Part shown: in pieces, positions 22,872-58,684 of the stretch
How positions within the stretch are numbered: position 1 is the first letter of the stretch
Layout: each line of letters opens with the position of its first letter
Assembly (NCBI GenBank): GCA_965202585.1
Contig: OZ241833.1
Location: 37,944,001-38,008,000, forward strand
From: Thalia democratica
Lineage: Eukaryota
Reading direction: 5' to 3'
DNA: 64,000 nucleotides
The notes under the pieces: generated by a model
Database searches by the model: none
Told to the model about the DNA's origin: nothing
The model's input: only the letters and a program-made list of their open reading frames with translations
Made by a program: the position numbers and the translations under genes

Positions 22872-25202
22872 TAGAAGAATCAGAGCAGCAAGAGCAGATT
22901 CAAATTTTGAACATACAGCAACTGTTCGACGAACACCACAGAAGACAGCAGGAATTTGACAACAAACTGTTCATTGTACTTCTTGTTGTTGTCTCAATTG
23001 CACTTGTTACCAGCTTGTACTTTAGTGTTAGTTCTGATATTGGTTTAGTTTTTCATTTTGCATAAGTTTAATAAAAGTACTAAAAATATCTGTTAACGTT
23101 TTGGTAGATTAGTAGTTTTTTTTCAATTTTTTTAATGAGCAACTATTTTATAAGTTGTCACTAAACTGAATAAAACTCTCAACTTAAATGGTATTTTAAA
23201 TACTTATTACCATTAGTATTTTTTTTGAAGAAAAAGTTGTAGAAACTTTTTTCAAAATAAGTTTGATTTTGGTAAAAAATAGTTTTGCTGCTGAAAACTT
23301 CTACTGACAGCTGTTTATTTTTTATACGGCATTTCTTTTTTCTTTCAACTAAAGCACATACATCATTTAGTACTAAGCTTTCGTAAATTTCTGGTTTAAG
23401 TTTTTTGTTTAAGTTTATTGACAGTACGCACTACTTTTCTGACTTTTAAATATTAAAGTCTTGGCAAAAAGACACAAGCCTAGCATCTGAAAGAAAGAAA
23501 ACGTTTTAGTTTTAGTATATTAGTTTTATATTGAAGTTTTTTTTGTAAATTTTTGTAGATTTTACTTTTTTGTTAACTTTCTAAATTCCATTTTACTTTG
23601 GACTTTTAAGCATGTAGAGATCAATACCATAATAAACAAACAAAAAGTATTCTAAACAATAACTACATAATAACATGTCTATCTTTAATAAAAATCTTCA
23701 AGTTTTTTAATTTCAACAAATCTACAGCAGACGCAATGAGTGGTGTGCAATCGGCCTGCTCAAGAACATCAAACAACCAGTCACGATCCAGGACGTGCCA
23801 ACAATCGCGTTCCAGAACTAACCAATCGCGTTCCAGAACTAACCAATCACGTTCCAGGACCAATAACCAGTTGAGTCCACCAGCCAACGCTTGCCAACCA
23901 AGAAGAAATGTAGAGATAGTGGATGAAGAGGAAGAGATGGAATTCAGCTTGTTTAGGATCGGATGTGCTTCCGGAGTGTGTTTAGTCATCATGCTTGGAA
24001 CTTACAATATGATTTTTGCACCTGTAACTGATAAAAATCCGTGAGTTAACATTTATTTTTTGTTGTAAAAACTAGTATTTTTAGTTTTCTTACAGCTTAT
24101 ATCAAAAATTTTTAGTTTGTCTCATTTGTTTTTGTTAGACATTTTATACAAAATTTTCTATAGAAATCACCCTCCAAGAAGGCCTGCTTTAAAACCCAAC
24201 GACTACCCGAAATTTCCTCCCGTTGACAGACCTCCAGTACAAAAACCATTTCCTGCTATTGACAGACCTCTAGTACAAAAGCCATTTCCTGCCATTGACA
24301 GACCCCCTGTACAAAAACCATTTCCTGCCATTGACAGACCCCCTGTACAAAAACCATTTCCTGCCTTTGTAGAACCTGATGTTGTAGGGTTTCCAAGTGA
24401 TTTTGGTTACGTTAAAAAACCTCCTGTTAGTATTCCGGATCCAAAGAACCCAAACAACAAACCTCCAAAAAACCATCTTCCCAAGAAAAAGTGGTGGGAA
24501 GAGGATTTTAGCAAAAAATCTTTTGATGATGTTACTCCTGGTTATGATCCCCTTGCTGATATTGACCCTTTTGTTTGGGACGGTACTAAAAAATCAGAAA
24601 AGAGTGTAGAGTATCCGAGAGTTTTTGACCCAAGTTGTAATTGGGACGGCACTAAAGAACCAAAAAAGAAGGATGATAAAAGCCCGCCTCCGTTGCCTTT
24701 AAAGATCGAACCTGAAGGCTTTGTACCTCCGATCTGGAATAATCCGAAAAAAGTTGATGATGGAAAATACGATCCAAACTGGGATAGACCCAGATTTGTA
24801 AAAGAAGAAAAAACTCCGTCTGAATTTGACGACGATGATGTCTATTTGCCTGGTTTTGACGATGACTACAAACCGCCGGTGTGGGAAAGTCCGAAAAAAG
24901 TTAACAACGGAAAATACGATCCAAACTGGGATCGCCCTAGGTTTGTAAAAGAGAAAACTATGTCCGCTTTTGATGACGATAACTTTTATCATGAAACTGA
25001 CAACGAATACAAACCGCCGGTGAGGAAAAATCCAAAAAAGGTTGTCAAGGGCAGCTTCGATCGCCCTGGATTTTCGGCCGGAAGAAACCAAGCTCCTATT
25101 AAAAATGATCTGGCTCCGGAATGGGATGATGAAGACTATTACGCTCCAAAATACTCAAGTAAGAAAAAAGAACGTACTTCTTTCCAAGCTGTAGACTGGT
25201 AG
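22872..25202 (+). CDS. Paralog A: membrane-anchored Ser/Arg-repeat, Pro/Lys-repeat protein of unknown function (447 aa from ATG 23736; longer if the upstream TM exon is used)
   Basis: Exons 22872-23042 (phase 1-1; RRQQEFDNKLFIVLLVVVSIALVTSLYF, a TM segment), 23728-24040 (SRSRTNQ repeats, acidic run, TM FRIGCASGVCLVIMLGTYNMIF) and 24164-25202 (DRPPVQKPFPAI x4; 49-aa repeat x2.5; TAG). Phases are consistent. The start exon for the first exon was not identified. Confidence 0.8.
24225..24366 (+). repeat. 36-bp coding tandem repeat x4 (DRPPVQKPFPAI)
   Basis: Read directly; the same array is present in paralog B at ~34399-34540. Confidence 0.9.
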
Positions 25203-32196: not shown

Positions 32197-33119
32197 GTTA
32201 GTTTTTTTTTTGATGTATGTATCAACTTAACCTCAAATCGTTGCTATTTAGTATTTTAGTTAGTTATTAACGAAATGCAAGAATATTTTACAGTTTTATT
32301 TCACAAAATAAGCTATATTTTTGTAAATAAACTTGTTTTCAAATTGCTGCCAGTTTTGTTTAATAGACATTAAATTAAACTCTGTTATTATACCAAATTT
32401 TTTAGCTCAATTATCAGCTTTCATTTGTTTAAAAGAGTGTTAATAGCTAAATATCATTTTTTTTTTGTTTCATTGAAAGGCAATAAACGTTTTGTAGATT
32501 AAATATAACTTGATTTGTAAAAAAAATTGTTCTCTTACACCTTAAAACTTTTAAAGTTAACTACCATTTGCTTCTTACACTTTACTAAGTTATTTTGATA
32601 AAGAAAATAAGTACATAAACTGGTATAAAGCACTAAAAGGTTTTTTTTACTTCAATTAGTAGACTTTTACGTAAAAATTCAAACTTAAAAATTACTTGTA
32701 ATAGTATTTGTATACAAACATATCATAAAAACACCAGTAATAAAACTATAACAGTATTATGTAATTGAAAACTACCAAAGAAAAAAACTAATGATGTTTT
32801 AACAAAAAGCAAGTGAGAAAGTATTTGTTTACATTAAGTTTAAATTAACCAAGTACATATATCAAATATAAAACCTCTTGGCATACTTCTTAAACATTAA
32901 AATAATTTATAACGCCTTAAACGAATTGTAAAATAGATTTTTAAGAACTAAATAGCTAAAACAAGCATTTATCTATAAAACCAATGTATCATACAAGCAA
33001 ACAATCATAAAAAAATTTAAAAATTCAAGTAAATTGTAGCTGGTTAGCTTGAAAACTCTGTAACACTTTTACTTGCAACTTGCATCAAATTAAATTTCAA
33101 CAAATTCACAGCAGACGCA

Positions 33120-36100
33120 ATGAACACTCTGCAACCGGCCCGATCAAAAAGGTCCAACCGGTCAAACAACAACCAGTGCCAGCCAGCACGGTCCAAAACC
33201 AACCAGTCGCGCTCCAAAACTAACCAGTCGCGCTCCAGGACCGACCAGTCGCGGTCCAGGACCAACCAATCGCGCTCCAAGACGAACCAAGCGTGCTCTA
33301 GGACGAACCAATCGCGCTCCAGGACACTTCAATCGCGCTCCAGTCCGAGGAGGAACGGTCAAGCGCAGACGGAGCTCGACTACGAAGATGACGAAGACGA
33401 CCTCGTCTTCAGCCCACTGAGGATCGGATCGTTCTTGGGAGCGGTCCTCCTTCTGATGTACGGAACGTACGGCATGTACGCGTCAATCGGAACCAGTAAC
33501 AATTACGTTAAACCGTTAGTTGGTTGTTTTATTTTGATTTAGTCTTTTTTTTTGCTCCTCATCACTGACTTCCTTCTATTTTAGGTTAAGTTTTAATTTA
33601 GTTACATCTTATTATATTAAATTTAACTAAAATCCCACATTTTAAACGAGTTATTCTACTTTGTTTTAATAATACCATCGTTTTTTTAAAACATAAAAAA
33701 AAAATTAAGTTTTTTTTTTTTTTAAACCACAGCTTATCAGTTTATTTGTTTAAAGCACACCTGTTTAGGTCAAATATTTTTTATATAAAACGTTTTGTAG
33801 AAACCCCCGGTTGAATCCGAGACCGTTCCCACGTCCGATAATCAGTACTCCGACACCGTTAGTTGATACTTTTGTTTCAGTCTAACTTCTAAATATAACT
33901 ACACCTCCTTTAGTTTGAACAGATAAAAAACCTTCTATTTTTAGCAGACTTTTTTTTTACATTGTATTAAGTTTGAACGTTGTATTTTTAATGAGTAACT
34001 GAGTTAGTCAATTAATAATATTTGAAAATTGTTTTTTATTAAGCACTTTTATATTTCATATAACATGTTGCGATTTAGTTTATTATTATTTTGGTCATCA
34101 TTTTAAAAGTTACTGGAAAGTAGACCAGATATTTTTTTGTAGACGACCTCGCTTAATGCCTAGCCCTGGAACAGACCCGAGTTTGAAACCGGCAGGCCCC
34201 ATCATCCCTCCATTTGGAAATCCCCCAGCGGGCAGACCATCGAAAAAACCCAGGCCCAAGAACCCTCCAAAGTTATGGCCAATAGGAGAGCCGATGCCCG
34301 TTACAAAACCCAATCAGAACCCTCGATTTCCTCCGATCGGCCAACCTCCTGCAGGCCGACAATTTCCCGCCAACGACGGACCAAGATTACCTGCCACTGA
34401 CAGACCTCCAGTACAAAAACCATTTCCCGCCGTTGACAGGCCTCCAGTACAAAAACCATTTCCCGCCGTTGACAGACCCCCTGTACAAAAACCATTTCCC
34501 GCCATTGACAGACCCCCTGTACAAAAACCATTTCCTGCCCTTGTAGATCCTGACGTTGTAGGTTTTCCAGGTGATCGAGATTACGTTAAAAAACCTCCCG
34601 TAGGCAGACCAAGGAACCCCAACGACAAACCTGCGAACGGCCCGAAGAAAAATCCGCGGGAAGAGCTGCCTCCGCTGCCCAGGTGGGAGATACTTCCCGG
34701 TGGCCTCGTCAAAGTGCATCCCGGTGAGCTTCCGCATGTTGAGATCGAACCAAAGAGGAGTGTGTTAGATGAAAACATGTACCCGAGGAACAAAGACTTT
34801 GTTTGGGACGGCGGCGAAAAAAAAAAGTACAAGCCAGTCGCCGTCGACCCGAGCGACAAATACCATTACCCCGTCGACGGTAATCCCGTCGAAGGCAGGT
34901 CTTACTCGAAAAACCCAAGTCCCAGGTTTACCAGGCAATCGAAAGGGGAGCCCAAGCACGAATACGGCGAACCCGAATATCCTGTCAACAAAAAACCTAC
35001 GGGTGGAAATCTACGGGATGTCAATGATAGAACCCGTGTTGGGCGGAAACCGTCCAATCGAAAGCCCAACATCAAACTACCTTTTCGTAAAGTTCCAATA
35101 AATATCAAAAAACGTCCTGCTTATCGGTTTCCCAAAGACCCCGTTAAAAAACCTTTTGTCAGAAGATTTCCGGAAGATCCCATCAACATACGTATAACAG
35201 ACCAGCTCGAAGGATATGTTTATGATTCTGATAATCCGTATGGTAACAAACCTGCAGATTTTGACCTAAAAGATTTGATTGAGAAGCGTCTTGCTGCTAA
35301 ACGTTCTCCAAATAACTCGAACAACAAACCACCTTTTGGTAAAATTCCAAAAAATCTCTCCAACCGTCCTCCTTATAGGTTTCCGGACGTTAAATTACCT
35401 CTTCCCCGAAAGTTTTCGGAAGATCCCATCAACATACGTAATATAGAGCTCGAAGGGTATGTTTATGATTCTGACAACCCGTATGGTAACAATCCTGCGG
35501 GTGGAAATCTACGGGATGTCAACGATAGAACCCGTGTTGGGCGGAAACCGTCCAATCGAAAGCCCAACATCAAACCACCTTTTCGTAAAGTTCCAATAAA
35601 TATCAAAAAACGTCCTGCTTACCGGTTTCCGAAAGATCCCGTTAAAAAACCTCTTCCCAGAAAATTTTCGGAAGATCACATCAACATACGTAATATAGAG
35701 CTCGAAGGATATGTTTATGATTCTGACAACCCGTATGGTAACAAACCTGCAGATTTTGACCTAAAAGATTTGATTGAGAAGCGTCTTGCTGCTAAACGTT
35801 CTCCAAATACCTCCAACATCAAACCACCTTTTCGTAAAGTTCCAATAAATATCAAAAAACGTCCTCCTTATAGGTTTCCCAAAGACCCCGTTAAATTACC
35901 TCTTGTCAGAAAATTTCCGAAAGATCCCATCAACATACGTGAAAAAGACCAGTTCGAAGGATATGTTTATGATTCTGATAACCCGTATGGTAAAAAACCG
36001 GGAGAAGTTGATCTAGATGATTGGATCGAGAAACGTCTTGCTGCTATACAATCTCAAAAAACCTCCAACAAAAGACCAACGAAACACCGGCTTAAAGATC

Positions 36101-37232
36101 ATGTTGATGGTTCTAAACATCCTTATGGTGATCTGCCCGTAGAAAGCTTCCGATCTCCCAAAAAAAGTCCTAAAAGATATCAAGTCCGAAAGAAAAAGTG
36201 GTATGAGGAGGACTTTAGCCGGAACGCAGATGATTCTTACGTTTATGACGATGTGGACTCTGATTTTTTTTGGGATTACCTCTTACCAATTGATAGAAAA
36301 CGCCCTCAAAAATCCGGATCACCTTCGAAAGCTCCAGCCGGTGAACATCTAGGTGACATCAATAACCGGGGCCGCCTCCTGTTCGAAAAAAAGAAGCGAA
36401 CACAACCCCATTACAATCCCCTTGACGGTGTTGACCAGGGTTTTGTTTGGGACGGAACCAAACAACCAAAAAAAAGCGTAGAAGATGAATACAGGTATCC
36501 CAGGAATAATGACTTTGTTTGGGACGTCACCCAACGGGAATTTCCGAAAAAAGCTAATAAGGGAAGACACGATCGAAACCAGGACCGCCCCAGATTCGAA
36601 AAAATTATGCGATCTTTGCGCGGGGAAACTGAACCTTCGTTTGGTGATAACGATTGGCACACTGCTAAGAAATTTGACAATCAGAAAAAACCCAATGTGA
36701 AAGATTTCAATCGCCAGAGATTTTCAGCCGGTAAAAGCCGAGATCGCTTTGAAAATGACTTGATGCCGGAATGGGATAACGAAGACTTTGAAAACCAAAA
36801 CTACGGTCAAGGTAGAAGATACTTTATTTTTTTGTTGATTTTTTTTTGTTTTTGCACAGCTTTTATTTGAACTTTAATCTCATAACAAAATTTAGTCTCC
36901 TACACTGACAGATTTACGTTTTAAAGCAGCATAAATTTTAAACACTGTTTAAAGGCGGAACCAACCCAAGCAAGAGGAAACGTTCTTCTTTCGCCAGAAA
37001 TTCCAGGATGGCGAAAGACGAAAAAAGCATCCGGTTCCCGCGCTCGACCGGAAACCCCCGTTTTCGAAACCTCGAGAACGCAGACGGGATGAGAAGCTAC
37101 CGGCAAATGAGGAATGATGCAAGGGACGAGGGAAATCTCCGGGGCATTCCCAGGAGAAGCAGGGGAGTTCCCAGAAGAAGGAAAATGAATGAGGGGTTCG
37201 GAAGAAACCTGAACAAAAATCTAAATTTTTAA
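33120..37232 (+). CDS. Paralog B: 1132-aa membrane-anchored Ser/Arg-repeat, Pro/Lys/Arg-repeat protein of unknown function
   Basis: join(33120-33514, 33801-33857, 34143-36811, 36955-37232) = 3399 nt, phases 2,2,1 consistent, GT-AG introns. NQSRSRT x6-7, acidic run, TM LRIGSFLGAVLLLMYGTYGMYASIG, 12-aa repeat x4, ~82-aa repeat x4. Confidence 0.85.
35002..36070 (+). repeat. Higher-order coding repeat: four ~82-aa units arranged as 2 x 166 aa (498 nt)
   Basis: GYVYDSDNPYG codons start at 35212, 35455, 35707 and 35959; GGNLRDVNDRTRVGRK starts at 35002 and 35500. Confidence 0.9.
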
Positions 37233-42621: not shown

Positions 42622-42627
42622 TTTATT
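42622..42627 (-). promoter_or_regulatory. Candidate RPS29 polyadenylation signal
   Basis: AATAAA on the minus strand ~55 nt downstream of the stop codon. Confidence 0.45.
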
Positions 42628-42680: not shown

Positions 42681-45600
42681 TTAGTCCAACTGTAAATAAA
42701 ATTAGATTACATTTTGTAAAAAAAAAGTTATAACAATATAAACCTTGATCATTAATATTGCACTTCGTATACTATTTTTAAGGTTCTAAAAATGAAAGTC
42801 AAAATTGTAAAATGTTCTTTTAAAAATCCTACTTATCACTTCTGAGAAAACAAACTTGTATGATTTATCAATATCATGAACTTAAATAAAAGTTATACTA
42901 TTAAAAAGTTTGAATATTGTTTTTTAATTTCATGAAAACAAAAAAAATTAAAATTAAACTTTCTAAAATTAATTGCGTTTTGTTAAAAAAATCTTTTAGA
43001 TACTTTTTTAATTTAACTAAACGTAAATGTTAGCAAGAAAAATATAGTACTCTAGACATTGTAAGTAAATAAATTGTCTAGTTTATTTAAATACAATAAA
43101 AAACAATTATAAAGTCAACACTTGTAAAAAATTGTAGTACAACACTTAAACATAAAAGAACACTATCATATTGAAAACCAAAAGAATAGTTTTTCTTTAT
43201 AGAAAACAGAAAAAACGAACCTTTTTGAAACCGATTTTCTCAGCGTACTCTCTGAAGCATTGCCTGGAAATATTCAATCCGTATTTGCGAATCAGACCGT
43301 GCCTGTTTCCACTGATGCGACTGTTGAAAACAATTATAAATTATCAATTTGATGATAACAATGAAAATTTGTTTTACACAGAAATTAGCTAAAATAATAA
43401 AATAAATATCTAACAATTGAGAAAATAACTGTTGAAAGCATTTAGTATCAAATGATAATGTTTCAATCAAAAATTCTTTTTACATGAAACCAGGAAATTA
43501 ATTCAGTTTTATTAACAATTTATCTTCTTGTACAGTTTCTAAGCAACTGATTTAAGTGGTTGGGTGTCACTTTTGCACGAGGATACTGTTTGATGTTACA
43601 ATAACAAATTTATTTTAGAATCAGGAACATTCAGTTTAATATAGGTCGTAAAGGGTAAAAGAAACTAAAAACAATCACAGTTTTAAAAAACTGTAAAAAG
43701 AAACTGATAGTTTTTTATTAAAAAAAAATACAAGTATTTAAAAAGTTGTTTATCCCTCTACCTATGGCCTTAATAAGTATGAGTTGCTACTGTTTATGTC
43801 AAAAAACTATCATGGGGTTTTTAATTTCTTTAAGAGTTATTTCAACTTCTCAAAACTAACAAAAACCATCTTTCTAACAAAACTGGTTATATAATAAATA
43901 TATTTTTGGAACTAACTTAATTAAATTTCACTCAAAATCTATAAAAAAAAATGTACTGGGAACTTATAAAAACGTTGAAACTATGCAAGTTTATAAAAAA
44001 ATTCCAGAGTCTACCTGTGTAAAAAACTCAAAATATCCAGAGTAATCCTGAGCTGTCCTGGGTTTTCAATAACTCAAAACATCCTGAATACCCTGATAAT
44101 CATAAGTGTGTGGTAACCCTGATATGAACATTTAGTACTATAAATACAGTGAAATTGAGTATATAGCTAAAGAATTATTTGCACTTGGCAAACACCACCA
44201 AAACACACTGGGCAGAATTTTAGATGATTTGCAGAAAATTTCACTTTGGCAGCATTTGATTTTCTGAAAACCACCCAATGCAAACAGTAGGGGACTCAAA
44301 AAACAAAACCTTTCAGTTTTTTACTCGAAGTAATTTTGTTAAGCAATTATCATAAAAAATATTGTGCTTAATTTAAGACAATTTAAAAAAAATTTATGGT
44401 GGCACTATTGATATTTTGAAAAAAAAAAAGACAATCAAGAACATTTACAAAAATTTATAAAAATTACATTAAATCAAGAACTATTTACATAAAATTCCTT
44501 CTTTGAATTGTCTTAAACTCTGCACTGTGTTTTTCTATGATAATTGCCAAATATAAAGCAACTTACGGCTAAAAACTTTAAGATAAAATTTTCTGGATCT
44601 TATACAGTTTGCATTGGGGTGATTTTCACAAAGCCAAATTCTGTCAAGGTGAAACTTACTTGAATTCATCTGAAAATTTAGCAATGGGGTGTTTTTGTGG
44701 CATTTGCCAGGAATTTTTTTAGCTCAAAACCCATAAGTTGCCAGATTTATAACCACCTTAATGTACATAGACTTCATTTAAAATGTGAAATCAAAATACA
44801 ATTGTTTAATGTAGCTTATTGCTACAACCATACAGTACTTACTTAAAAAGTGAATAAATAAACACAAATAAAAACCTACCTCTTACATGTTTTTTGAGAT
44901 TAATAACTCAACTTTTCAGTTTTTTTTTCAACTTTTGTTAAAATCTTTAGTGCCAAATTTAGACACTATATCACTTAATCTTTAGACATAAATTAGTAAT
45001 GAAAATTTATGTCTAAAAAAAACACTAAGCTATTTTTTAGGTTTACTTTTCAAAAACATGCTTTGTGTTGTTTAAATTTTTAATTCTTAGTATAAACACT
45101 TTATGTAAGATTTTCTGGAAATTTTTGGTATGTATCTCAAAAAACATAGAAAATTTAATTTTAGTAGAATAGATTATTTTCATCTTTTTAATTTGCACCT
45201 CTTTTAAAAAACCAATTCAACTATTAAATTTTAATCCCTTATATCTCACACCTATTTTGAACTTAATAAAAGGTAAACAGTATCTAATAGCTTAGTTGCC
45301 GCATATGTAAACAACAAGATTAAAAAAGTGTTTACCCCCTATGCCCTAAAACTAGCCAGAGATTTAGGATAAAATATCCACTTTAAAACAAGCTTGAATC
45401 AGCCTGAGTTTTTCAAAAAGACTTTAACTAGTCTGATTTAGCAGTTGGGTTTAAAAAACCTCAAACTACCCAGATTTCTCTTGGGTGTGTGGCGACGCTC
45501 ACATTAAAAACAAGCCTGACAACTACAAGCATGGGAGTATTTTAAACAGGGTTTCCAAAAGTGGGCCATATAGCCCCCTGAGAGCTATGAGGTCATAATT

Positions 45601-48600
45601 TGAAATAGTTTTTAGGTTTATTTAAGAATTTTTATAGTCTTTTTTTTTGATACACCTGTTTGAAGGAAATAATTGCTTTTTAGAATTTTTAAAAGGAGCA
45701 TTATGAAAAAAAAGTTTGGTAAAGACCATTTTTAAAATGAACTTATATTTTAAAACTTTTGTAAACAAGAAATTTAAACAACTTTGCAAAAAATATGTTC
45801 AAGAAAATTTACAAACATAAAAAGTATTTGATTTTATATTTAGTTTTATTTTTTAAAGAATTTATAACTTATGCATTTTTTTAAATACATAAAAATGTTA
45901 TTATTCTGAAGACAATATTTCTTTATTTTATAATTTCAAAACTGCAAGAAAATTAAAAGGGTTGCTAATCTTTAACACAAAAAACTAAGCCTGAATGACC
46001 AAAAATCAGGAGTTACATCTAGCTAGCTTGAAAAAGCCTAAATTGATGAGAAAATTGAAAAAATATATATTGACTAACAAAAAACTTATGAACTATACAG
46101 CTTAAAATGGTTAAATACTTAAAATACCAGAATAATGGCAAGACAACATAAAAAAAAGTTTCTAAAACTCAAACTAGCCAGAGTTATCAGAAGTAATTTG
46201 AAAAGTCTGAACGGGTTGCAACTCTGTAACTAAGAAGAAAACTTGACTGCTTAAATGAATTAAAAAACATTTACCCTTAAAAAAATATAAAAGCTATTAA
46301 CTAGTTTAAAATAATTTTAAGCACAACAATTTTCACAGGATTAGTACTCTTGAGGCAAAAAAGCCAGCATGAGTAAACAAAAACTAGACTGAGTCTATCT
46401 GAGTTTCAATAAAAATTATATATATAATTAAGGGCATAGGGGGTCCACCTTGATTTTTACAAGTTGATCTTATTTTGTCTGAGCTATCAGACATTTTTAA
46501 CTGCTTGAAAAAATTCAAAGTATTTTTTGAGATATAAGCATTCAAAGTCGGTGACCTCAATAAGTTTCTAATGGAAGGCGCAAACTAAAAGCGAAAAAAA
46601 AGACCATTTCACTGAAAATTTATCTCCTCCTTCATTTTTCAAGCAATCTTCTTCATATTTTCACAGAAAGTGTATTACTAAATTTAAAAAAAATTGAATG
46701 CAGGATATTTTAAAAGAAAATTTAATTTTTTATTAAAATAAAAACCACTTTTTTTTTTGTTTTTTTATCTAAAGTTTTTATTTTTCAATACTTTATAATT
46801 CCAACATACCAAGTCTTTTAAACTATAAAAGGAACATTTCCTGGAAGTTTGAGGTCTCTAGCTCAAAAGATGAAGGAGGAGATAGGTTTTTAGTAGTTTT
46901 TAAAATTTCCAAAAAAACCTCACTCCAAAAAGTTTGCAGTCTATACATTTGTATTGGAAACTTTTTATAAAAGTTACAATATTTCAAAAGTTAAATAAGA
47001 TTTTGTTATTCTATAAAAACTGACTTGTAGTTTGTACTCCAAGCTTTCATATAAGATCCAATGTTATTTATAGAAAAAAATGTTGGACCCCCCTATGCCC
47101 TTAATATGATTTAAAATCTTAAAAACTACTTTTATGCCAGCTTTTATACCTAAAAGTATCATAAGAATAACAAAAAATAATAATAAACATATTTTTAAAG
47201 TTATACAAAGTTTTGTTAAGAATACAGTCTGGCTTATAATTAATAATTTTTATACTTATTCTATAAAAGAGCTTAATTTTTAATTCTCTTTTTTAATTGC
47301 TCTTTTTTTTTAATTCTTACCCCTTCTATACCCTTTAATTTTCTAGTCATAAAATATACTTTTTATGCTCCTTTTCCTTTTTTGCCATAGAAATTCAATT
47401 TTTTTCTTAAACACCTTATTTTAGGGAATAAAAAGTGAGGGGGTAAGGCATTTTTATAGATGTTTATCTTATTTTAAATACCTTTAATTAAGCTAATAGT
47501 TGCTTTTCACTGTTTCTTATAACAAAAATTAGTTTTTGAGATATGAGAAGACAAAGTCAAAATGTTCAACAGGGTCCTTATTGATAGGAGAAGTTAAAAA
47601 GGCATAAAAACACTAGTTCATTAGAAAATTATCTTCTTCAGTTTTTAGGAAATTTTTCTTAAATTTTCTCAGTTTATCTTACGTTAGTTATAAACAATCC
47701 TATAGTGGCAATTTAGAAAATTTTAAGTAAATTTTTATTTTTAATTAAATTTCTTCTAATGGTCTGAATATTTTTACTGTTACACTAGGATTTTTTTATA
47801 ATGCAAGGAACATTTAATGAAATTTTAAGGTTAATAGCTTAAAAAATGAAGGAGGAGACGGAAATTTAGTGATTTTTCCAAAATTCTCAGAAAATTGGCC
47901 TTGAAAGTTTGAGTTCATACTGTTGTATGAGATATGTATAGACATTTTTTACAAAAATGGTTATACCTCAAAAGTTAATTGAAACTATTTTATATAATTT
48001 ATAAGCTTTCAAATAAGAGCAAATGTAAAAGTTTGTTATTATGTTTTTTTAATAAGCATGTACGTTACAGTGCACATAATAAAGTTTGATATTCACAAAA
48101 AATCTTAATTTAAAATTGAATAATTTAAATGCCTTTCTTCTACCTAAAACCTTAATATGTCATGTAACTATAAAAACAACTAAACATTAAACAAGTACTT
48201 TTGTTAATTAAAAGTGTAATAATATTCAGGCAATAAGGGGAAGTAAATAACTTTTTTCACAACTTGATCTTATTTTGTAGAGTTTTATTTATTTAATTAC
48301 AAATAGCTTTTTACATCATTTTAAATTTTAAAATATTTTTTTAGATATAGCTAGTGAAAGTTTAAGAGTACAACAGGTTCCTTATAAGAGGAAAAATCTA
48401 AAATAGCAAATAAATCAAAATCACTAAATATATATATTCTCTTAGGTTTTTGAGATAAATACCTTAAACTTTTAGGAAATGTTACTTGCAATTGTTAAAA
48501 ACTCTGCAAGATCAATATTGTTTAAAAATATAAATAAACATTTTTAAATAAAATAAGAAGTGAAAATAAATTATAATCATTAAAAATATACCCCTAAATT

Positions 48601-49156
48601 TTTTTAGTACGTCTTACCCCTAACCAACCTTACAACTTATAAGGGTTGCCACTGACTTTTGGAAAATTCTCTCTAGGTTTTCAAAATTTTATCCAGGTTT
48701 TTTAAAGTACATGTTTTTGGGTCTAAATTTAGTTTAAGGGCATTAGGGGGGTAAAACACTTTTTACAATTCGATCTTATTTTATATAGTTTTTACTAAGC
48801 TTCAAGATGCTTTTCACAGATTTTATAATTTTGAAATAAACTTTGACATATAGCTGGTCAAAGTCAGAGGCAACAATAGGCTACTTATGGGAGGTGCAAA
48901 CTAATTTACTGTATGAATATAATGTAATATATTTAGCACCACCAACTTACATGTTTATGATTAAAAATTGCAAGAATATATTGTTACTTAATTTTACCTA
49001 CCCAAAAATAATTTTTTTGTTGTGATAAAAAGTAATACAATCATACAAAACTTTATTAAAATAGTAGTAATATGATAATAATAAATAAACTAACCATTCT
49101 CTTGAGCCACGGCCATATTTGCGTGGATGACTGTACCAGATGTTAGCATGACCCAT
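42681..49156 (-). CDS. RPS29: 40S ribosomal protein S29 (uS14), 56 aa, with C24S and C39S substitutions
   Basis: complement(join(42681-42689, 43221-43320, 49095-49156)); exons of 62+100+9 nt, the coding exon sizes I recall for vertebrate RPS29. Protein [56 protein letters not shown], recognisable from [35 protein letters not shown]. Splice sites are GT-AG. Confidence 0.96.
44184..44711. mobile_element. Foldback MITE in RPS29 intron 1
   Basis: Imperfect inverted arms of ~105 bp: CTTGGCAAACACCACCAAAACAC...CCAATGCAAACAG versus CAGTTTGCATTGG...GTGTTTTTGTGGCATTTGCCAGG. Confidence 0.7.
46432..47100. mobile_element. Non-autonomous TTAA-specific DNA transposon (Kolobok-like), 669 bp
   Basis: TTAA|GGGCATAGGGGGTCCA ... 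TGGACCCCCCTATGCCC|TTAA, with subterminal inverted TATCTCCTCCTTCATTTT / AAAGATGAAGGAGGAGATA. A TTAA TSD with purine-purine termini fits Kolobok rather than piggyBac (CCC). Related ends are at 45327-45346 and 48738-48905. Confidence 0.8.
48738..48905. mobile_element. Truncated end of the same Kolobok-like family
   Basis: TTAA|GGGCATTAGGGGGGTAAAACAC followed by sequence homologous to 46455-46590. Confidence 0.6.
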
Positions 49157-50513
49157 ATTGATTTGTCAGTATATTGAGTAAGCTTTGAGATACCAAAAAT
49201 GTTTCTGACTTAAAAGGATGTAGTGGATATGAATTCATAGTAATAGTTATTTTATGGTCTGATGAACACATGCTCAACATTCTTATTGTTACCTTTGAAG
49301 CATTTTTCAAAACTATGTAGGTTAAAGTAAGATTTATATCTAACTACTGTATCTAACATGTATTTAAATTTACAAAAACTTTAACAACATTTTATAACCG
49401 AGGTTTAATTTTTTTATATAATTAATATTTATGAGAAAAAAACAACTCTTTCTCCGATATAAGCTAAAATATATTTTACAATAACACACTTTAATGTGAA
49501 AACTAAAGATGTTTCTTATTCTTAGCCAAGGACCAGACGTGCCAAAAATAATAGTGATTATACCAACTGAATATTAAATTCTTTACAAACGTTGGTTTTA
49601 ACTTTAAAATTCATGCTCGAGTAATTTTTCATAAATTAAATAACTGAAAATAGCAATCCTGCTAAGGACTATAAAGTAAGACGACAGAGTATAAGAACAA
49701 CGTTTCTTTAAAGTTTATATTGCAACAAAATATTTACTTTATAAAATATTGAATACAAACTATTGCCAAATATAAAGACTTTTTTTAAGTTTTAAGTTAC
49801 TTTAAAAACAGCATTTTAATAATATTTTAAGTAGTAGTAGACTATCTACTTCTTTGCAATAACAACTTTATGATGTACTTTTTAGTTTAAAAAAATTTTT
49901 GAAGTTTTATAACATATTTATTTTAAACAATTTTTTAAAATAGAGCAATTTAATCTGTTTATTAAATAATAATTTTTTATTTTTAATATTTTTTAACCAC
50001 TTTATATATCGTTTTTTATATTATTTGTTAAACCAAAGTGTAAGCAAGCCTTGGTTATGAAAACTATTAAGTGTCGTTTTTTAATACATATTGTCAAGAT
50101 AACATAAAAACTACTTTTAAAAAAACAAAAGAATATTCTACTTTAATATTATACAAATTTTAAATTCAAAGAAATAATTTAAAACATAAAGTTTTGTGAA
50201 TTGTTAAAACTACTAGTTTATTTAATCAATTTAAAACTTTTTTTAAGTCTTTTTTATTAGAAATATAAACTGCTGAAAGAAAAATAAAAATTGCGTGTAT
50301 TTTAAGTCTATTATCTTAGATTTTTTACTGTTTACCTATCTCCGCTCATTTATTTTACATACCAAAGTCTTATTATTGTCAAAAGCCATTTAAGAAAATA
50401 TCTATCACAAAGATTAGTATGCTAACAATCAAACTTAGTACTAAAGCGCTGAATTAACTTCATTCTAACTCACAATTTTTGTCTGCAACAACTTGAGCAA
50501 AGTAAAAACAGGA

Positions 50514-50831
50514 ATGGCAAACTTAAACGGAAACGCTGATCTATTTCGAGTCCGTGTAGTCAATGGAAACTTCATAAACTTGGCGCGCGAAGACGTGCTT
50601 GCAATGACAGCTGGCTTCCACGACTTCAGTGCCCTTTACAGGCACCTCTTCTACACTCACAACTGCTTCTCCTTCTACAAGATCGGTGTGGACCAGGCAA
50701 ATACGTATGCGGTCATATTGAACCTGAGAAATGAAGTGGTTTGTTCGGTCCGGTTCGACAACAGACTCTGGGCATTAATTTGGCTTCAAGGAGATATCAT
50801 GGGCCAGTTTGAAATTCAAGATGTGGACTAG
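50514..50831 (+). CDS. Orphan 105-aa protein, tandem copy 1 (single coding exon)
   Basis: ATG 50514 (AACAGGAATG, same context as copy 2) to TAG. GC-richer than its flanks, ~72% aa identical to copy 2 with identical length. Confidence 0.75.
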   Translation: MANLNGNADLFRVRVVNGNFINLAREDVLAMTAGFHDFSALYRHLFYTHNCFSFYKIGVDQANTYAVILNLRNEVVCSVRFDNRLWALIWLQGDIMGQFEIQDVD

Positions 50832-53390
50832 TGTTTCCGGTTTCCAAAAAAGTTTTTCAGAGATTCCAGTTTTGAGTGTTAAAAACTGTTTGCTGAAATT
50901 AGTGTTTTGTTTTGGCAAAACATGCACTGGATGTGGGTTTATTATATAATGTATTATAATTTGAATTAATGTCTTCTTCGCAATTTTAACATTTCTTGTA
51001 GTTTGGGTATTTTAAATTAAGTATTACTAATATAATTATTAGCTGGTTTAAGATCGTATTTTTAAATTTTAATATAAATTAAATTTAAATTTTAACGTAC
51101 AACATATTTTTTGTTAAAAATAACTATAAACTGGACACTATAATATGGTTAAAACATTTTTTCCTTATTATCACAATATTTGTTCAATAAATCCTCATTA
51201 AACAAAAAAATGTAGTTAATTTATATACTTCTAGTTTGATATAGTTACATACTTTAATAAGTAATTTTAGTTTATTATAAACAACTAAGCATGAAATTAT
51301 AAGCAGAAAAAAGCAAATAGAGGCAGCCTTATATTTAGAATAAGGCAGATAAGATTAAAATTTTACAATAGTATACCTTTTACATTGGATGATGAGTTTT
51401 ATTTGTAATAGTCATTTAAGTATTACTTAAGTGAAAAAAATGGTCAACTATCTACGTTGATAATAAACTGACAAAGTAACAAGTATACAGCTTCTAAAGT
51501 GTTAGTTAGGACTACATTTGAAATAAAAGCATAAATATGTGAGTTTTATAGACTACCTTTAATATGTAACAGTCAAGAAATTCTAATATAAAACCTTTAA
51601 AAGTCTGTAAAGAAATCAAATAAAGTAAGAATAAGTTTTTTTAAAACGTTGTTATATTTTAAGTATTTAGAAAATGGAATAGTTTAACGATTTTCCCTAA
51701 AAAGCATTAAACTTTGATTAAGAAATTTTTTTCGTAACAAAAAAATTTATGTTACAGGATGATTTCTAAAACAGTATTTTATAAACCAGCTTTTAAAACT
51801 TTTAAATATTCAATTTAAATTCGTTAGTTGTACATTCATATTTTCAAACTTACTGTTTGTGAGCAAGCACGTTTGTTTTTTTTTTGTGTTTTCTTGTTTT
51901 TATTTAGAAGCGTATAAGGTTAATATTCTAAAACAACTATGTTAACTTAGTATTATGGTCCAATTAAGGAGAAATAAAAAGTTTTAAGAAACAATATCAG
52001 TTTATTACCAAGTAAAAAAAAAACTTTTCAAATTATATGACCATTGTTCTAGATTAAAACAATTTTTTCTACTTAAACAGATATTTTTGGTTAACAATTA
52101 ATTTAAGGTTTATAAGTAGTTGGTTGAATAAGAATACCTAGTTCAATTAAAACAAACTGGCAAGTAAAGCTTTTAATTGTTAAGCAGGAATATAAAGTTA
52201 AAAGATTTTATCAAACATTAAACCATTAGTTTGAAAATCCAAATATTTTCAAACTTTTTTATTACTTTCAATATTATCACAAAGTGCTTGTCTTAAAAAA
52301 GTGTTTTTTACTTAATCAAATAAAATCAGATATTTTATTTTTAAATTAAAGGAACACTTTTATGATAGAAGTGAACGAATCTATGATATCCTTTTCAATT
52401 GCGTTTAACATTACTGTTTTTTTTTCAGTTTCTATTTAAATTTGTTTGGAAGCATGCTCAAAATGTTAAGCTGAATGTTGCTTGGTTATAGTTGAAAAAA
52501 GTATGCGTTGTATTTAAAAATATTTTTTAAGTTTAATACCAAAAAAATTTGAAGTGATATTCGTATTAAGACATTTTTTTTGTTTTAAATATTTTATTTA
52601 CTTTACAATTAAAATAAGTTTTGTCTTTCGTACGAGTTGTTTTGCTATCGTATTAAGCATTTTTTGTAAAGTTAAACTAACTAAAAAGCCAGAATTTTGA
52701 TAATATTTAACTAGTTATTTTTACTTGATATGAAAATTAAACATTGAGGAATCTGTAAGTTTTAAAATAAGCAGTAAAGTTTATTTTTCAAGTAAATACT
52801 CACAGTAACAAAATAAAAACTGTTTATTTAGTATTAACACTCAAGCTTAAGTATTTTAAAACTAAGCTGTTTTTTTTTGTGGTTTATACTACTTCTTATA
52901 CAGTTTATAGCAAGAATAAGACATAAAAGTTTTTAAGTTATTAAAAAACAATTTAAAGATAAAAATAAAAACTACTATTAAAATATGTCATTACAACAAA
53001 CTATTACATTAGCGTTTTATCTTAACAGTAAAATACCTATATTTGAAAAAAACAAAAAGCCTAAGAAACTTATTTTTTAGAAACGATAAAATTAATATCC
53101 TACTAAGCCTTTTTTATTATAAGTACTGCTACTGACGAAAAAGCTAGGTTTTTACGTTTTAACAATATGTTATCTTAGTTCTTTACTACATATTTATGTA
53201 TCGACGTTAATTCATTTGACATGTTAAAGTTTCAATACTGTCATAAGCCGTTTAAGAAAAAAATCTATGACAAAAATTAGCATACTGACAATCAAACTTA
53301 GTATTTAGGTGCTTGTTAGCTTTACACTGAAACACAAGGTTTATCTGCACAGCTTGAGCTAGTTAACAAAAGGGCAAAGTAAAAACAGGA

Positions 53391-53708
53391 ATGGCGAGCT
53401 CAAACGGAAACGCTGATCGATTTCAAGTTCAGTTACTCAACGGAAACACAGTCAATTTGGCGCGCAGAGAAGTTATTGCAATGGAGGCTGGCTTCCGCTA
53501 CTTCAGAGCTCTTTACAAGCACCTCTTCTACACTCACAACTGCTTCTCCTTCTACAAGATCGGTGTGGACGCGGCACATACGTATGCGGTCATACTGAAC
53601 CTGAGAAATGAAGTGGTTTGTTCGGTCCGGTTTAATTGTAGAGTCTGGGTAGAATTTTGGTTTCAACCGCAGATCATGGGCCAGTTTGAAATGCAAGATG
53701 TGGACTAG
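53391..53708 (+). CDS. Orphan 105-aa protein, tandem copy 2
   Basis: Intact ORF, colinear with copy 1; shared core HLFYTHNCFSFYKIGVD...YAVILNLRNEVVCSVRF. Confidence 0.75.
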   Translation: MASSNGNADRFQVQLLNGNTVNLARREVIAMEAGFRYFRALYKHLFYTHNCFSFYKIGVDAAHTYAVILNLRNEVVCSVRFNCRVWVEFWFQPQIMGQFEMQDVD

Positions 53709-57500: not shown

Positions 57501-58384
57501 GTTATGTTTCAAAATTTTTTTAAAGTTTAATGGTAGCAAAAAGTTGCATTAAGTCTGATGTTTATTTCGTTATGTTCGTTTAGTTTGAAAATTAATATCT
57601 TTCATATAAACTGTTTTCAATTATTATGCTAAATAATTTTGAAAAGTTACACTTGCTAAAAACCAACAAATGATATTTAACTAATTATTTCTTACTTTGA
57701 TACCAAATTATAATATTATGCTGTAACCTTTAAGTTTTAGAATAAATAGTAAAGATAAAAAAAAATATTTAAAATCAAACTAACACGATAACAAAGTTTA
57801 AAGTTTTATATCAAATAATAATATTCAAGCTCAAGTATTTCTAAACTAAATTGCCTTTGTAGTTTATATTACTTTTTATACAATTTTTAGCAAGCGTAAG
57901 AAATAAAAGTTTTTAAGTTTTTGATAAAAATTGTCTAAATAGAAATTACTTTTTATTTATGTCATCAAAATAAGCTAATAAATTAGCGTTTAACTTAAAC
58001 AGTAAATTATACATATTTCAAAACCATTAAAAACCTAAGAAACTTATATTTAAGAATTGATGAAATTAAAACTCTACTAAACAATGTTTTTATTAAAAAT
58101 TTTAAGATTAGTATACAGACAAAAAAAAAACGTCCTAAAATCTGTTATCTAAGTTTTGTACTACATTCTTATGCATATACGTTTTTTTTATTTTTTATGT
58201 TATAGTTTTAGTACTGTCAAATGCCATTTTATAAAACTTTTACAAAAAGTAGAATGCATTACACAGAGATTAATGTGCAGATAACTAAGCTTAGTACCAA
58301 AACGCTGAATCAACTTCATCCTTACACACAATTTTTATGTGCAGCAGCTTGAGTTAGTTAACTAAATTGCAAAGTGAAAAAACA

Positions 58385-58684
58385 TTGGCCAACTCAAACC
58401 AAAACGTTACACATTTTTTGATTGAAGTGCTGAACGGAGACAGGTTTATTACGTCATACAGAGAAGTTCTGGCAATGGAGGTCGATTTTTGGAACTTCAG
58501 GAATCTCTTCTACAACTGCTTCCCCTTCTACAAGATAGGTATTGGGAGAACGCTATCAGGAAGATGGCGGTCATGCTGAACCTGAGGAGCCAAGTGGTGT
58601 CCTCGGTCCGGTTTTACAGCAAAGCCGTCAATTTTGTTTCAACCAGAGATCACGGGCCAGTTCCGGATGCAAGAAGTTGACTTA
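58385..58684 (+). pseudogene. Pseudogenised third copy of the orphan family
   Basis: ATG replaced by TTG, an internal deletion around YRHLFYTH, and homologous peptides split over different frames (NCFPFYKIG / AVMLNLRSQVVSSVRF / FQPEITGQFRMQEVD). Confidence 0.8.

What the first reader, a model, noticed from the sequence alone, without database searches (positions are those of the whole stretch)
43221..43320. RPS29/uS14 that has lost half of its zinc ligands (CxxS-x14-SxxC)
Seen: the spliced gene gives an intact 56-aa RPS29 with C21 and C42 kept but C24->Ser (AGT, 43313-43311) and C39->Ser (TCC, 43268-43266), each one base from a Cys codon. All other hallmark residues, the exon sizes and the splice sites are intact. 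Established: eukaryotic uS14 normally binds Zn via CxxC-x14-CxxC, and Zn-free (C-) S14 paralogs are known in bacteria as a Zur-regulated zinc-sparing response (e.g. Bacillus subtilis YhzA). Inference: this may be a metal-independent animal uS14, either the lineage's only copy or a specialised paralog; the two remaining Cys could form a disulfide or bind metal weakly. I cannot tell from sequence alone whether relatives share this state.
Basis: partly seen in the sequence, partly recalled or inferred. Interest (0 to 1): 0.8.

Follow-up and report, generated by a model that had tools for sequence, protein, structure and literature searches.

The report
Salp RPS29 lacking two zinc cysteines
This pelagic tunicate's ribosomal protein RPS29/uS14 really has lost two of its four zinc-holding cysteines, but the change is old and shared with sea squirts, and it repeats what many fungi and protists have done, so it is a normal working gene and not a special zinc-sparing copy.

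Summary
Observation confirmed. A three-exon minus-strand gene (49156-49095, 43320-43221, 42689-42681) encodes an intact 56-aa RPS29/uS14. The zinc-ligand positions 21/24/39/42 read C-S-S-C.

It is not an assembly error or a pseudogene:
- Marine JGI contigs from another species carry the identical protein as an uninterrupted ORF.
- Those contigs differ from the window CDS at 35 of 168 bases with no amino-acid change.

The state is lineage-wide:
- Ciona, Styela and Clavelina have the same exon structure and read C-T-S-C.
- The window protein and these three are the only ones of 188 relatives compared with Arg16.
- If the change arose once, Cys24 and Cys39 were lost before about 390 Mya.
- No four-Cys tunicate copy appeared in two database searches. 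No whole genome could be searched.

Zinc-ligand loss in eukaryotic uS14 is not unprecedented:
- Kluyveromyces lactis (C-S-D-S) and Schizosaccharomyces pombe (C-T-S-S) have solved ribosome structures.
- Many other fungi, a diatom and an environmental protist clade have it too.
- Cys21 is kept in every case, Cys24 becomes Thr or Ser (Asn once), and Gly25 usually appears.

Among the animals sampled, only tunicates show it, and I found no paper that mentions it. The "Zur-like zinc-sparing paralog" reading is not supported. Moderate interest.

The parts
49095..49156 (-). RPS29 exon 1: the ATG, codons 1-20 and the first two bases (tg) of the Cys21 codon. The donor GT is at 49094-49093.
   Evidence: Sequence read. 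The spliced translation gives the 56-aa protein. tblastn matches residues 1-20.
43321..49094 (-). Intron 1, 5774 nt, GT-AG, phase 2 inside codon 21.
   Evidence: Ciona, Styela and Clavelina have an intron at the same position and phase. No Rfam family matches inside it.
43221..43320 (-). RPS29 exon 2: the last base of Cys21 plus residues 22-54. It carries Ser24, Ser39 and Cys42.
43311..43313 (-). Ser24 codon AGT, at the position of the second zinc ligand (Cys in most eukaryotes).
   Evidence: This position is Thr (ACC/ACT) in ascidians and Ser (TCA) in the related marine species.
43266..43268 (-). Ser39 codon TCC, at the position of the third zinc ligand.
   Evidence: The codon is TCC or TCT in all five tunicate coding sequences compared.
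43257..43259 (-). Cys42 codon TGC, the retained fourth ligand position.
42690..43220 (-). Intron 2, 531 nt, GT-AG, phase 0 after Lys54.
   Evidence: The ascidians have an intron at the same position.
42681..42689 (-). RPS29 exon 3: Leu55, Asp56 and the TAA stop.
42622..42627 (-). AATAAA, a candidate polyadenylation signal about 55 nt after the stop. It is followed by TAGACAATTTA, which also follows an AATAAA in the related species' contig.
   Evidence: This is an inference from sequence only.
49212..49217 (-). CCTTTT, a pyrimidine tract about 60 nt upstream of the ATG. It is a candidate TOP-type start of transcription, as is usual for ribosomal protein genes.
   Evidence: Similar C/T tracts lie upstream of the Ciona, Styela and Clavelina genes. 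This is a weak inference.

Best explanation
This is the ordinary, expressed RPS29/uS14 gene of a pelagic tunicate, probably a salp. It inherited a degraded zinc site from an ancestor it shares with the sea squirts.

In that ancestor Cys24 became Thr (later Ser in this lineage), residue 25 became Gly and Cys39 became Ser. The Zn(Cys)4 knuckle can therefore no longer form. The 56-aa protein is otherwise unchanged, and I infer that it takes its usual place in the head of the 40S subunit. There the small knuckle would be held by hydrogen bonds from the new hydroxyl side chains and by its contacts with 18S rRNA and neighbouring proteins, not by a metal ion.

Shown here:
- the gene structure and the two Ser codons;
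- purifying selection on the protein;
- that ascidians share the state;
- that other eukaryotes with one Cys left at these four positions have this protein in solved ribosome structures.

Inferred:
- that no zinc is bound;
- that this is the only copy in the genome;
- the way the fold is stabilised.
For: 1. The gene is intact, with GT-AG introns at the same positions and phases as in Ciona, Styela and Clavelina.

2. JGI contigs L001-L003 encode the identical 56-aa protein without introns. Against the window CDS, 35 of 168 bases differ with 0 amino-acid differences, and the proportion of synonymous sites that differ is 0.81. The Ser24 codon is TCA there and AGT here. This rules out an assembly error or a decaying pseudogene.

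3. All three contigs end at the same base just after an AATAAA, and two differ upstream of a ...cag acceptor. Both features fit transcripts.

4. Ciona, Styela and Clavelina proteins read C-T-S-C and are 84-88% identical to the window protein. Arg16 is found only in these four among 188 relatives.

5. Those taxa span the Stolidobranchia / (Thaliacea + Phlebobranchia + Aplousobranchia) split, dated at 389 +/- 32 Mya (PMC5899321).

6. The top 120 rows of each of two protein searches, one with a tunicate profile, held no four-Cys tunicate protein. None of the 80 metagenome loci kept encodes a four-Cys protein with the tunicate YGRGSR motif.

7. K. lactis uS14 (C-S-D-S; PDB 3j80, 5it7, 6fyx, 4v92) and S. 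pombe uS14 (C-T-S-S; PDB 9axt) sit in solved ribosomes with a single Cys left.

8. The AlphaFold model has pLDDT 81-86 over residues 21-56. It matches uS14 chains at TM 0.6-0.7 (query-normalised), including those two.
Against: - No genome-wide search of this genome or of any ascidian genome for a second, four-Cys copy was possible. The protein searches show only 120 rows each, with one name per 90% cluster.
- Zinc content was not measured, and AlphaFold does not model metals.
- A 56-aa tree does not resolve the window protein with the ascidians. The tunicate assignment rests on shared derived residues, on membership of the same 90% cluster, and on other agents' unchecked notes.
- That JGI sample 3300018893 is a metatranscriptome is my recollection, not a tool result.
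- The state in Appendicularia (Oikopleura) is unknown.
Confidence: 0.72

Rival explanations
1. Specialised zinc-free paralog. The genome also holds a canonical C-C-C-C RPS29, and this copy is used in particular tissues or when zinc is scarce. That would parallel bacterial C+/C- S14 pairs, or the zinc-free duplicates reported in the microsporidian Encephalitozoon cuniculi.
For: - NCBI names the ascidian proteins 'uS14-like'.
- Zinc-free paralogs of some ribosomal proteins exist in one eukaryote, E. cuniculi (PMC8807834).
- I could not search the whole genome.
Against: - The gene keeps the ancestral three-exon structure at one locus in each of the three ascidians.
- No four-Cys tunicate protein appeared.
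- The protein is identical across species whose synonymous sites are saturated, as expected for the housekeeping copy.
- Pyrimidine-rich, TOP-like tracts lie upstream of the gene.
Confidence: 0.1
2. The site still binds a metal or forms a disulfide. Cys21 and Cys42 would act together with Ser/Thr hydroxyls, water or an rRNA phosphate to hold Zn2+ weakly. Alternatively, the two Cys would form a redox-sensitive disulfide.
For: - Cys21 and Cys42 are both kept in all tunicate sequences seen.
- Cys21 is kept in every Zn-less uS14 found, about 48 sequences counting the two seen only. It is therefore under some constraint.
Against: - Ser and Thr hydroxyls are poor zinc ligands (general knowledge).
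- In other lineages Cys42 is replaced by Ser, Thr, Ala or Val while Cys21 stays. Cys21 is therefore not conserved as half of a pair.
- The cytosol is reducing (general knowledge).
Confidence: 0.13
3. Artefact or dead gene. The two Ser codons would be sequencing errors, or the locus would be a pseudogene.
For: Each Ser codon is one base from a Cys codon.
Against: - Ser39, and Ser or Thr at position 24, appear in independent assemblies of at least five species, with different codons.
- The reading frame, splice sites, start and stop are intact.
- There are no amino-acid changes against a relative whose synonymous sites are saturated.
Confidence: 0.02

Closest known systems
Ascidian RPS29 ('small ribosomal subunit protein uS14-like': Ciona intestinalis XP_078492783.1, Styela clava XP_077970374.1, Clavelina lepadiformis XP_076806183.1)
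   Same: - 56 aa and 84-88% identical.
- Same three exons and intron phases.
- Arg16, Ile23, Gly25 and Ser39 shared; Cys21 and Cys42 kept.
   Different: - Position 24 is Thr (ACC/ACT) in the ascidians and Ser (AGT) here.
- Seven to nine residues differ in all, position 24 included (for example A4, Y8, E20, E48, K49, K53 here).
Kluyveromyces lactis uS14 in solved 40S/80S structures (PDB 3j80, 3j81, 5it7, 6fyx, 4v92)
   Same: Eukaryotic 56-aa uS14 with CRISG at residues 21-25, exactly as in the window protein. The zinc ligands are lost, and the protein is present in a working ribosome.
   Different: - It has gone further: C-S-D-S, with only Cys21 left.
- It is an independent fungal event. Saccharomyces cerevisiae Rps29A keeps both CxxC motifs (CRVC and CRQC in the alignment).
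Schizosaccharomyces pombe uS14 (PDB 9axt, 'Non-translating S. pombe ribosome')
   Same: C-T-S-S with Gly25 and NISRQ. This is the same replacement residues as in the ascidians.
   Different: Cys42 is also lost. It is a fungal lineage and an independent event.
Bacterial C- S14 paralogs (e.g. Bacillus subtilis YhzA; Zur-regulated zinc sparing; described in PMC13090322 and, from my own knowledge, by Makarova et al. 2001)
   Same: A uS14 family member that has lost cysteine zinc ligands.
   Different: - The bacterial C- forms coexist with a C+ paralog and are switched on by zinc starvation.
- They are longer proteins (from memory).
- Here the state is fixed in what looks like the single orthologous gene, and the length is unchanged.
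Zinc-free duplicates of ribosomal proteins in Encephalitozoon cuniculi (PMC8807834)
   Same: A eukaryote with zinc-free versions of ribosomal proteins that normally bind zinc.
   Different: There the zinc-free genes are extra paralogs, and the cryo-EM map showed the zinc-binding isoforms in the ribosome. Here no zinc-binding isoform was found.

Membership tests
Eukaryotic/archaeal-type uS14 (RPS29; Pfam PF00253 Ribosomal_S14) | Significant match to the family profile | tested here: met
   55.5 bits against a cut-off of 27, E 4.5e-15. Matches 61 PDB uS14 sequences, best E 4.9e-28.
Eukaryotic/archaeal-type uS14 (RPS29; Pfam PF00253 Ribosomal_S14) | About 56 aa with the invariant core residues (R32, K33, R40, F43, G51, F52) | tested here: met
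   All are present.
Eukaryotic/archaeal-type uS14 (RPS29; Pfam PF00253 Ribosomal_S14) | CxxC-x14-CxxC zinc site (positions 21, 24, 39, 42) | tested here: not met
   C-S-S-C here. 195 of 229 relatives collected are C-C-C-C. This feature is typical of the family but clearly not obligatory for it: K. lactis and S. pombe uS14 in solved ribosomes lack it too.
Eukaryotic/archaeal-type uS14 (RPS29; Pfam PF00253 Ribosomal_S14) | Orthologous gene structure (three exons, phase-2 intron in codon 21, phase-0 intron after Lys54) | tested here: met
   Identical in the window, Ciona, Styela and Clavelina. Three exons are also reported for tilapia RPS29 (PMC7072992).
Eukaryotic/archaeal-type uS14 (RPS29; Pfam PF00253 Ribosomal_S14) | Incorporated into the 40S head | not testable with these tools
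   Only indirect evidence: the predicted fold matches uS14 chains at TM 0.6-0.7.
Zinc-sparing C- S14 paralog system (bacterial, Zur-regulated) | A C+ paralog coexists in the same genome | tested here: inconclusive
   None in the window. No four-Cys tunicate protein in the lists. Whole genomes could not be searched.
Zinc-sparing C- S14 paralog system (bacterial, Zur-regulated) | Expression induced by zinc limitation | not testable with these tools
   No expression data under zinc limitation. Zur is a bacterial regulator.
Zinc-sparing C- S14 paralog system (bacterial, Zur-regulated) | Distinct, longer protein form than the C+ type | tested here: not met
   The length is the canonical 56 aa. The length difference in bacteria is from my own knowledge.
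Zn-less eukaryotic uS14 orthologues (informal group seen here: tunicates, several fungi, a diatom, an environmental protist clade) | Cys21 kept, Cys24 replaced by Thr/Ser, Gly at 25, positions 39 and 42 variable | tested here: met
   C21, S24, G25, S39, C42 here. Gly25 occurs in 29 of 33 sequences that lack Cys24, against 16 of 196 that have it (the counts are not corrected for relatedness). Cys21 is kept in all Zn-less sequences.

The most novel reading that the evidence does not exclude
Tunicates are the one animal group whose cytoplasmic ribosome runs on a zinc-free uS14 as its only copy. They reached it by the same narrow route that fungi, diatoms and other protists took independently at least eight or nine times:
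- Cys24 becomes Thr or Ser, and Gly appears at 25.
- Cys39 and Cys42 are then lost in varying order.
- Cys21 is never lost.

This would mean that there is a defined metal-free way to build this knuckle, and that Cys21 has an essential job unrelated to zinc.
Probability: 0.45. Interest if true: 0.5.

Novelty: new member of a known kind. Interest (0 to 1): 0.35.

Why it matters
A 2026 analysis treats the Rps29/uS14 CxxC pairs as a conserved zinc site across six model organisms, from yeast to human (PMC13090322). The data here show that the site is evolutionarily dispensable:
- It was lost about 390 Mya or earlier in the closest invertebrate relatives of vertebrates.
- It has been lost many times in fungi and protists, by a repeatable substitution pattern.

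This gives natural test cases for what the zinc ion contributes to 40S head assembly. Ciona is a tractable animal, and K. lactis and S. pombe already have solved ribosome structures. It also bears on how much of a cell's zinc is tied up in ribosomes, and on why Cys21 is kept when the metal is gone.

The finding does not reveal a new mechanism or a regulated zinc-sparing system.

Tried and rejected
- Exon 2 alone (33 aa) was too short for the homology search, so I used the spliced 56-aa protein.
- The first homology search missed the tunicate relatives. Their 90% cluster is represented by an unrelated 517-aa ATP-synthase beta sequence that falls outside the length filter. The exact-sequence look-up recovered them.
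- My first dN/dS run used a wrong exon 1 end. It was corrected.
- Rfam gave nothing at gathering threshold over the whole window, so no described intronic snoRNA was detected.
- There are no copies of exon edges and no second RPS29 in the window.
- There is no conserved synteny with the Ciona, Styela or Clavelina loci beyond RPS29 itself.
- The maximum-likelihood tree of 29 uS14 sequences is unresolved. The window protein is nearest to Styela, Ciona and Clavelina by path length, but no supported clade holds it.
It returned mostly non-tunicate RPS29, plus one set of ascidian-like exon 2 contigs reading RITG...NISRQC.
- P0157 (C-T-S-V, with an animal-like FQKLD tail) could not be assigned to any organism. 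It cannot be used to date the loss in Appendicularia.
- The look-up of earlier findings by sequence was blank, and the words RPS29/uS14 occur in no note.
- Seven paper searches found no paper that mentions zinc-ligand loss in tunicate, K. lactis or S. pombe RPS29.
- I considered zinc scarcity in the open ocean as a driver, given the diatom and the marine protist cases. I rejected it as a general explanation because benthic ascidians and many terrestrial fungi show the same loss.

Full report
**The gene**

On the minus strand the window carries a three-exon gene.
- Exon 1 is 49156-49095. It holds the ATG, codons 1-20 and the 'tg' of codon 21. The donor is GTtagt.
- Exon 2 is 43320-43221. The acceptor is ...caacAG and the donor is GTtcgt.
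- Exon 3 is 42689-42681 (Leu-Asp-TAA).
- The introns are 5774 and 531 nt.

The spliced product is a 56-aa RPS29/uS14. It scores 55.5 bits on Pfam Ribosomal_S14 and matches 61 PDB uS14 sequences.

The four positions that bind zinc in canonical RPS29 read Cys21 (TGT, split by intron 1), Ser24 (AGT, 43313-43311), Ser39 (TCC, 43268-43266) and Cys42 (TGC). The window holds only this one copy. Its G+C content is 28%.

**Real and under selection**

The exact 56-aa sequence is present in the public collection on three JGI contigs of 1.1-1.4 kb (sample 3300018893).
- The ORF there is uninterrupted.
- The DNA differs from the window's coding sequence at 35 of 168 positions without a single amino-acid change. 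The proportion of synonymous sites that differ is 0.81, which is saturated. So this is another species, and the protein has been held constant over a long divergence.
- Ser24 is TCA there and AGT here. These two Ser codon families cannot interconvert in one step, so position 24 has passed through another residue. Thr is the likeliest, because that is the ascidian state.
- All three contigs end at the same base just after an AATAAA. Two of them diverge immediately upstream of a ...cag acceptor. Both features fit transcripts. That the sample is a marine metatranscriptome is my recollection, not a tool result.

An assembly error or a pseudogene is excluded.

**Whose gene, and how old**

The first homology search showed no relative above 84% identity. 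The reason is that the protein's 90% cluster is headed by an unrelated ATP-synthase sequence.

The cluster look-up revealed its real neighbours: the 'uS14-like' proteins of Ciona intestinalis, Styela clava and Clavelina lepadiformis.
- They are 84-88% identical to the window protein.
- All three read C-T-S-C.
- Their genes have the same three exons and the same intron phases.
- Among 188 relatives aligned, Arg16 occurs only in the window protein and these three.
- Unidentified ascidian-like genomic contigs from JGI metagenomes carry the same exon 2 ([21 protein letters not shown]).

A 56-column tree cannot resolve the grouping.

Other agents' notes on this genome call it a very AT-rich pelagic tunicate, probably the salp Thalia democratica. 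These notes are unchecked, but they agree with what I see.

Thaliaceans are sister to Phlebobranchia + Aplousobranchia, with Stolidobranchia outside that group. That split is dated at 389 +/- 32 Mya (PMC5899321). The loss of Cys24 and Cys39 therefore predates that node if it happened once. Amphioxus, hemichordate, echinoderm and vertebrate proteins are C-C-C-C. The state in Oikopleura is unknown.

**Only copy or paralog?**

Two searches of the 5.8-billion-protein collection, one with the salp protein and one with a profile of four tunicate proteins, listed 120 proteins each. Neither list contained a tunicate four-Cys protein. None of the 80 metagenome loci kept encodes a four-Cys protein with the tunicate YGRGSR motif.

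This is fair but not conclusive evidence, because the lists are truncated and whole genomes could not be searched. The conserved intron-bearing structure and the pyrimidine-rich tracts upstream of all four genes fit the housekeeping copy.

**Not unprecedented in eukaryotes**

Zinc-ligand loss in uS14 turned up repeatedly.
- Schizosaccharomyces pombe: C-T-S-S, chain Aj of PDB 9axt.
- Kluyveromyces lactis: C-S-D-S, PDB 3j80, 5it7, 6fyx, 4v92.
- Starmerella: C-T-S-C.
- Diaporthe, Hortaea, Venturia, Neofusicoccum, Pseudocercospora, Jaminaea, Smittium and the diatom Chaetoceros.
- An environmental protist clade reading C-T-S-T.

The changes follow a pattern.
- Cys21 is kept in every one of about 48 Zn-less sequences.
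- Cys24 is always the residue lost. It becomes Thr in most, Ser in a few and Asn in one.
- Gly25 accompanies the loss in 29 of 33 sequences, against 16 of 196 that keep Cys24 (not corrected for relatedness).
- Position 39 is usually Ser.
- Position 42 may stay Cys or become Ser, Thr, Ala or Val.

The window's CRISG...NISRQC has the same residues 21-25 as K. lactis.

Among the animals sampled (arthropods, nematodes, flatworms, rotifers, molluscs, cnidarians, sponges, ctenophores, echinoderms, hemichordates, amphioxus and vertebrates), only tunicates show a genuine loss. Two of the other odd animal entries, Trp21 (Daphnia magna) and Thr21 (Strigamia), look like mis-called splice junctions. A third, Diorhabda (C-Y-C-C, named 'S29-like'), was not examined.

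**How it most likely works**

With two thiolates replaced by hydroxyls, a tetrahedral Zn(Cys)4 centre cannot form. Yeasts with only one Cys left assemble this protein into ribosomes that have been solved, so the fold does not need the metal.

The AlphaFold model of the salp protein is moderately confident over residues 21-56 (pLDDT 81-86). It superposes on uS14 chains, including those of K. lactis and S. pombe. AlphaFold cannot speak to metal binding.

I infer a metal-free knuckle held by hydrogen bonds and by rRNA and protein contacts.

A Cys21-Cys42 disulfide or a residual weak metal site cannot be excluded. Both are made unlikely by the free replacement of Cys42 elsewhere while Cys21 stays. 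Why Cys21 is always kept is unexplained.

**Comparison and verdict**

It differs in having a paired zinc-binding paralog, regulation by zinc, and a different protein length. None of these is seen here.

The closest matches are the ascidian orthologues and the Zn-less fungal uS14 proteins.

I found no paper that notes the loss in tunicates or in those yeasts. A 2026 analysis lists Rps29 as zinc-binding in all six model organisms it compares.

The finding is real and slightly under-appreciated. It is a lineage-wide substitution state of an ordinary ribosomal protein gene with ample precedent outside animals. I class it as a new member of a known kind, of moderate interest.

Noticed in passing
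window 24117-25202 and 34156-36870 (+), with upstream ORFs 23610-24041 and 33048-33539 (+): Two neighbouring long ORFs (361 and 904 aa) share proline-rich repeats (DRPPVQKPFPA...). Each is preceded by an ORF with SRSRTNQ repeats. They look like a locally duplicated, lineage-specific secreted or structural gene pair. The region 34-36 kb is the G+C peak of the window (44.6%).
   Followed up: no
window 1640-3400, 5584-5871, 6514-6768, 12294-12668, 13595-13873 (+): A series of Gln/Met/Asn-rich open frames with raised G+C (0.42-0.57). They look like exons of one large low-complexity gene, of the transcription-coactivator type.
   Followed up: no
window 50493-50831, 53367-53705, 58358-58576 (+): Three related ORFs of about 110 aa (...FYTHNCFSFYKIGVD...).
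   Followed up: no
protein collection, cluster of P0121: The 90% cluster that holds the salp, Ciona, Styela and Clavelina RPS29 proteins is represented by an unrelated 517-aa ATP-synthase beta sequence (P0122). Most of its listed members are other 515-518-aa sequences. This clustering artefact hides tunicate RPS29 from the length-filtered homology search.
   Followed up: partly
L002 and L003, bases 1-53: The 5' ends of two JGI contigs are an inverted copy of bases 470-522 of the same transcript (the CDS). This looks like a hairpin or strand-switch assembly artefact.
   Followed up: yes
all Zn-less eukaryotic uS14 sequences collected: Cys21 is retained in every uS14 that has lost the other ligands, even where it is the only Cys left of the four. 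Its zinc-independent role is unexplained.
   Followed up: partly
P0241 (112 aa) and P0242 (103 aa), from the representative search: Two database proteins contain two uS14 units in tandem. In P0241 the second unit has Tyr at position 21. In P0242 the first unit is partial. They may be fused tandem duplicates or gene-model errors in unknown organisms.
   Followed up: no
P0094 (Daphnia magna), P0067 (Strigamia) and several metagenome loci: Apparent Trp or Thr at position 21 arises where a gene model reads through the phase-2 intron in codon 21 (tg|gt gives TGG). This is an annotation artefact that can mimic ligand loss.
   Followed up: partly
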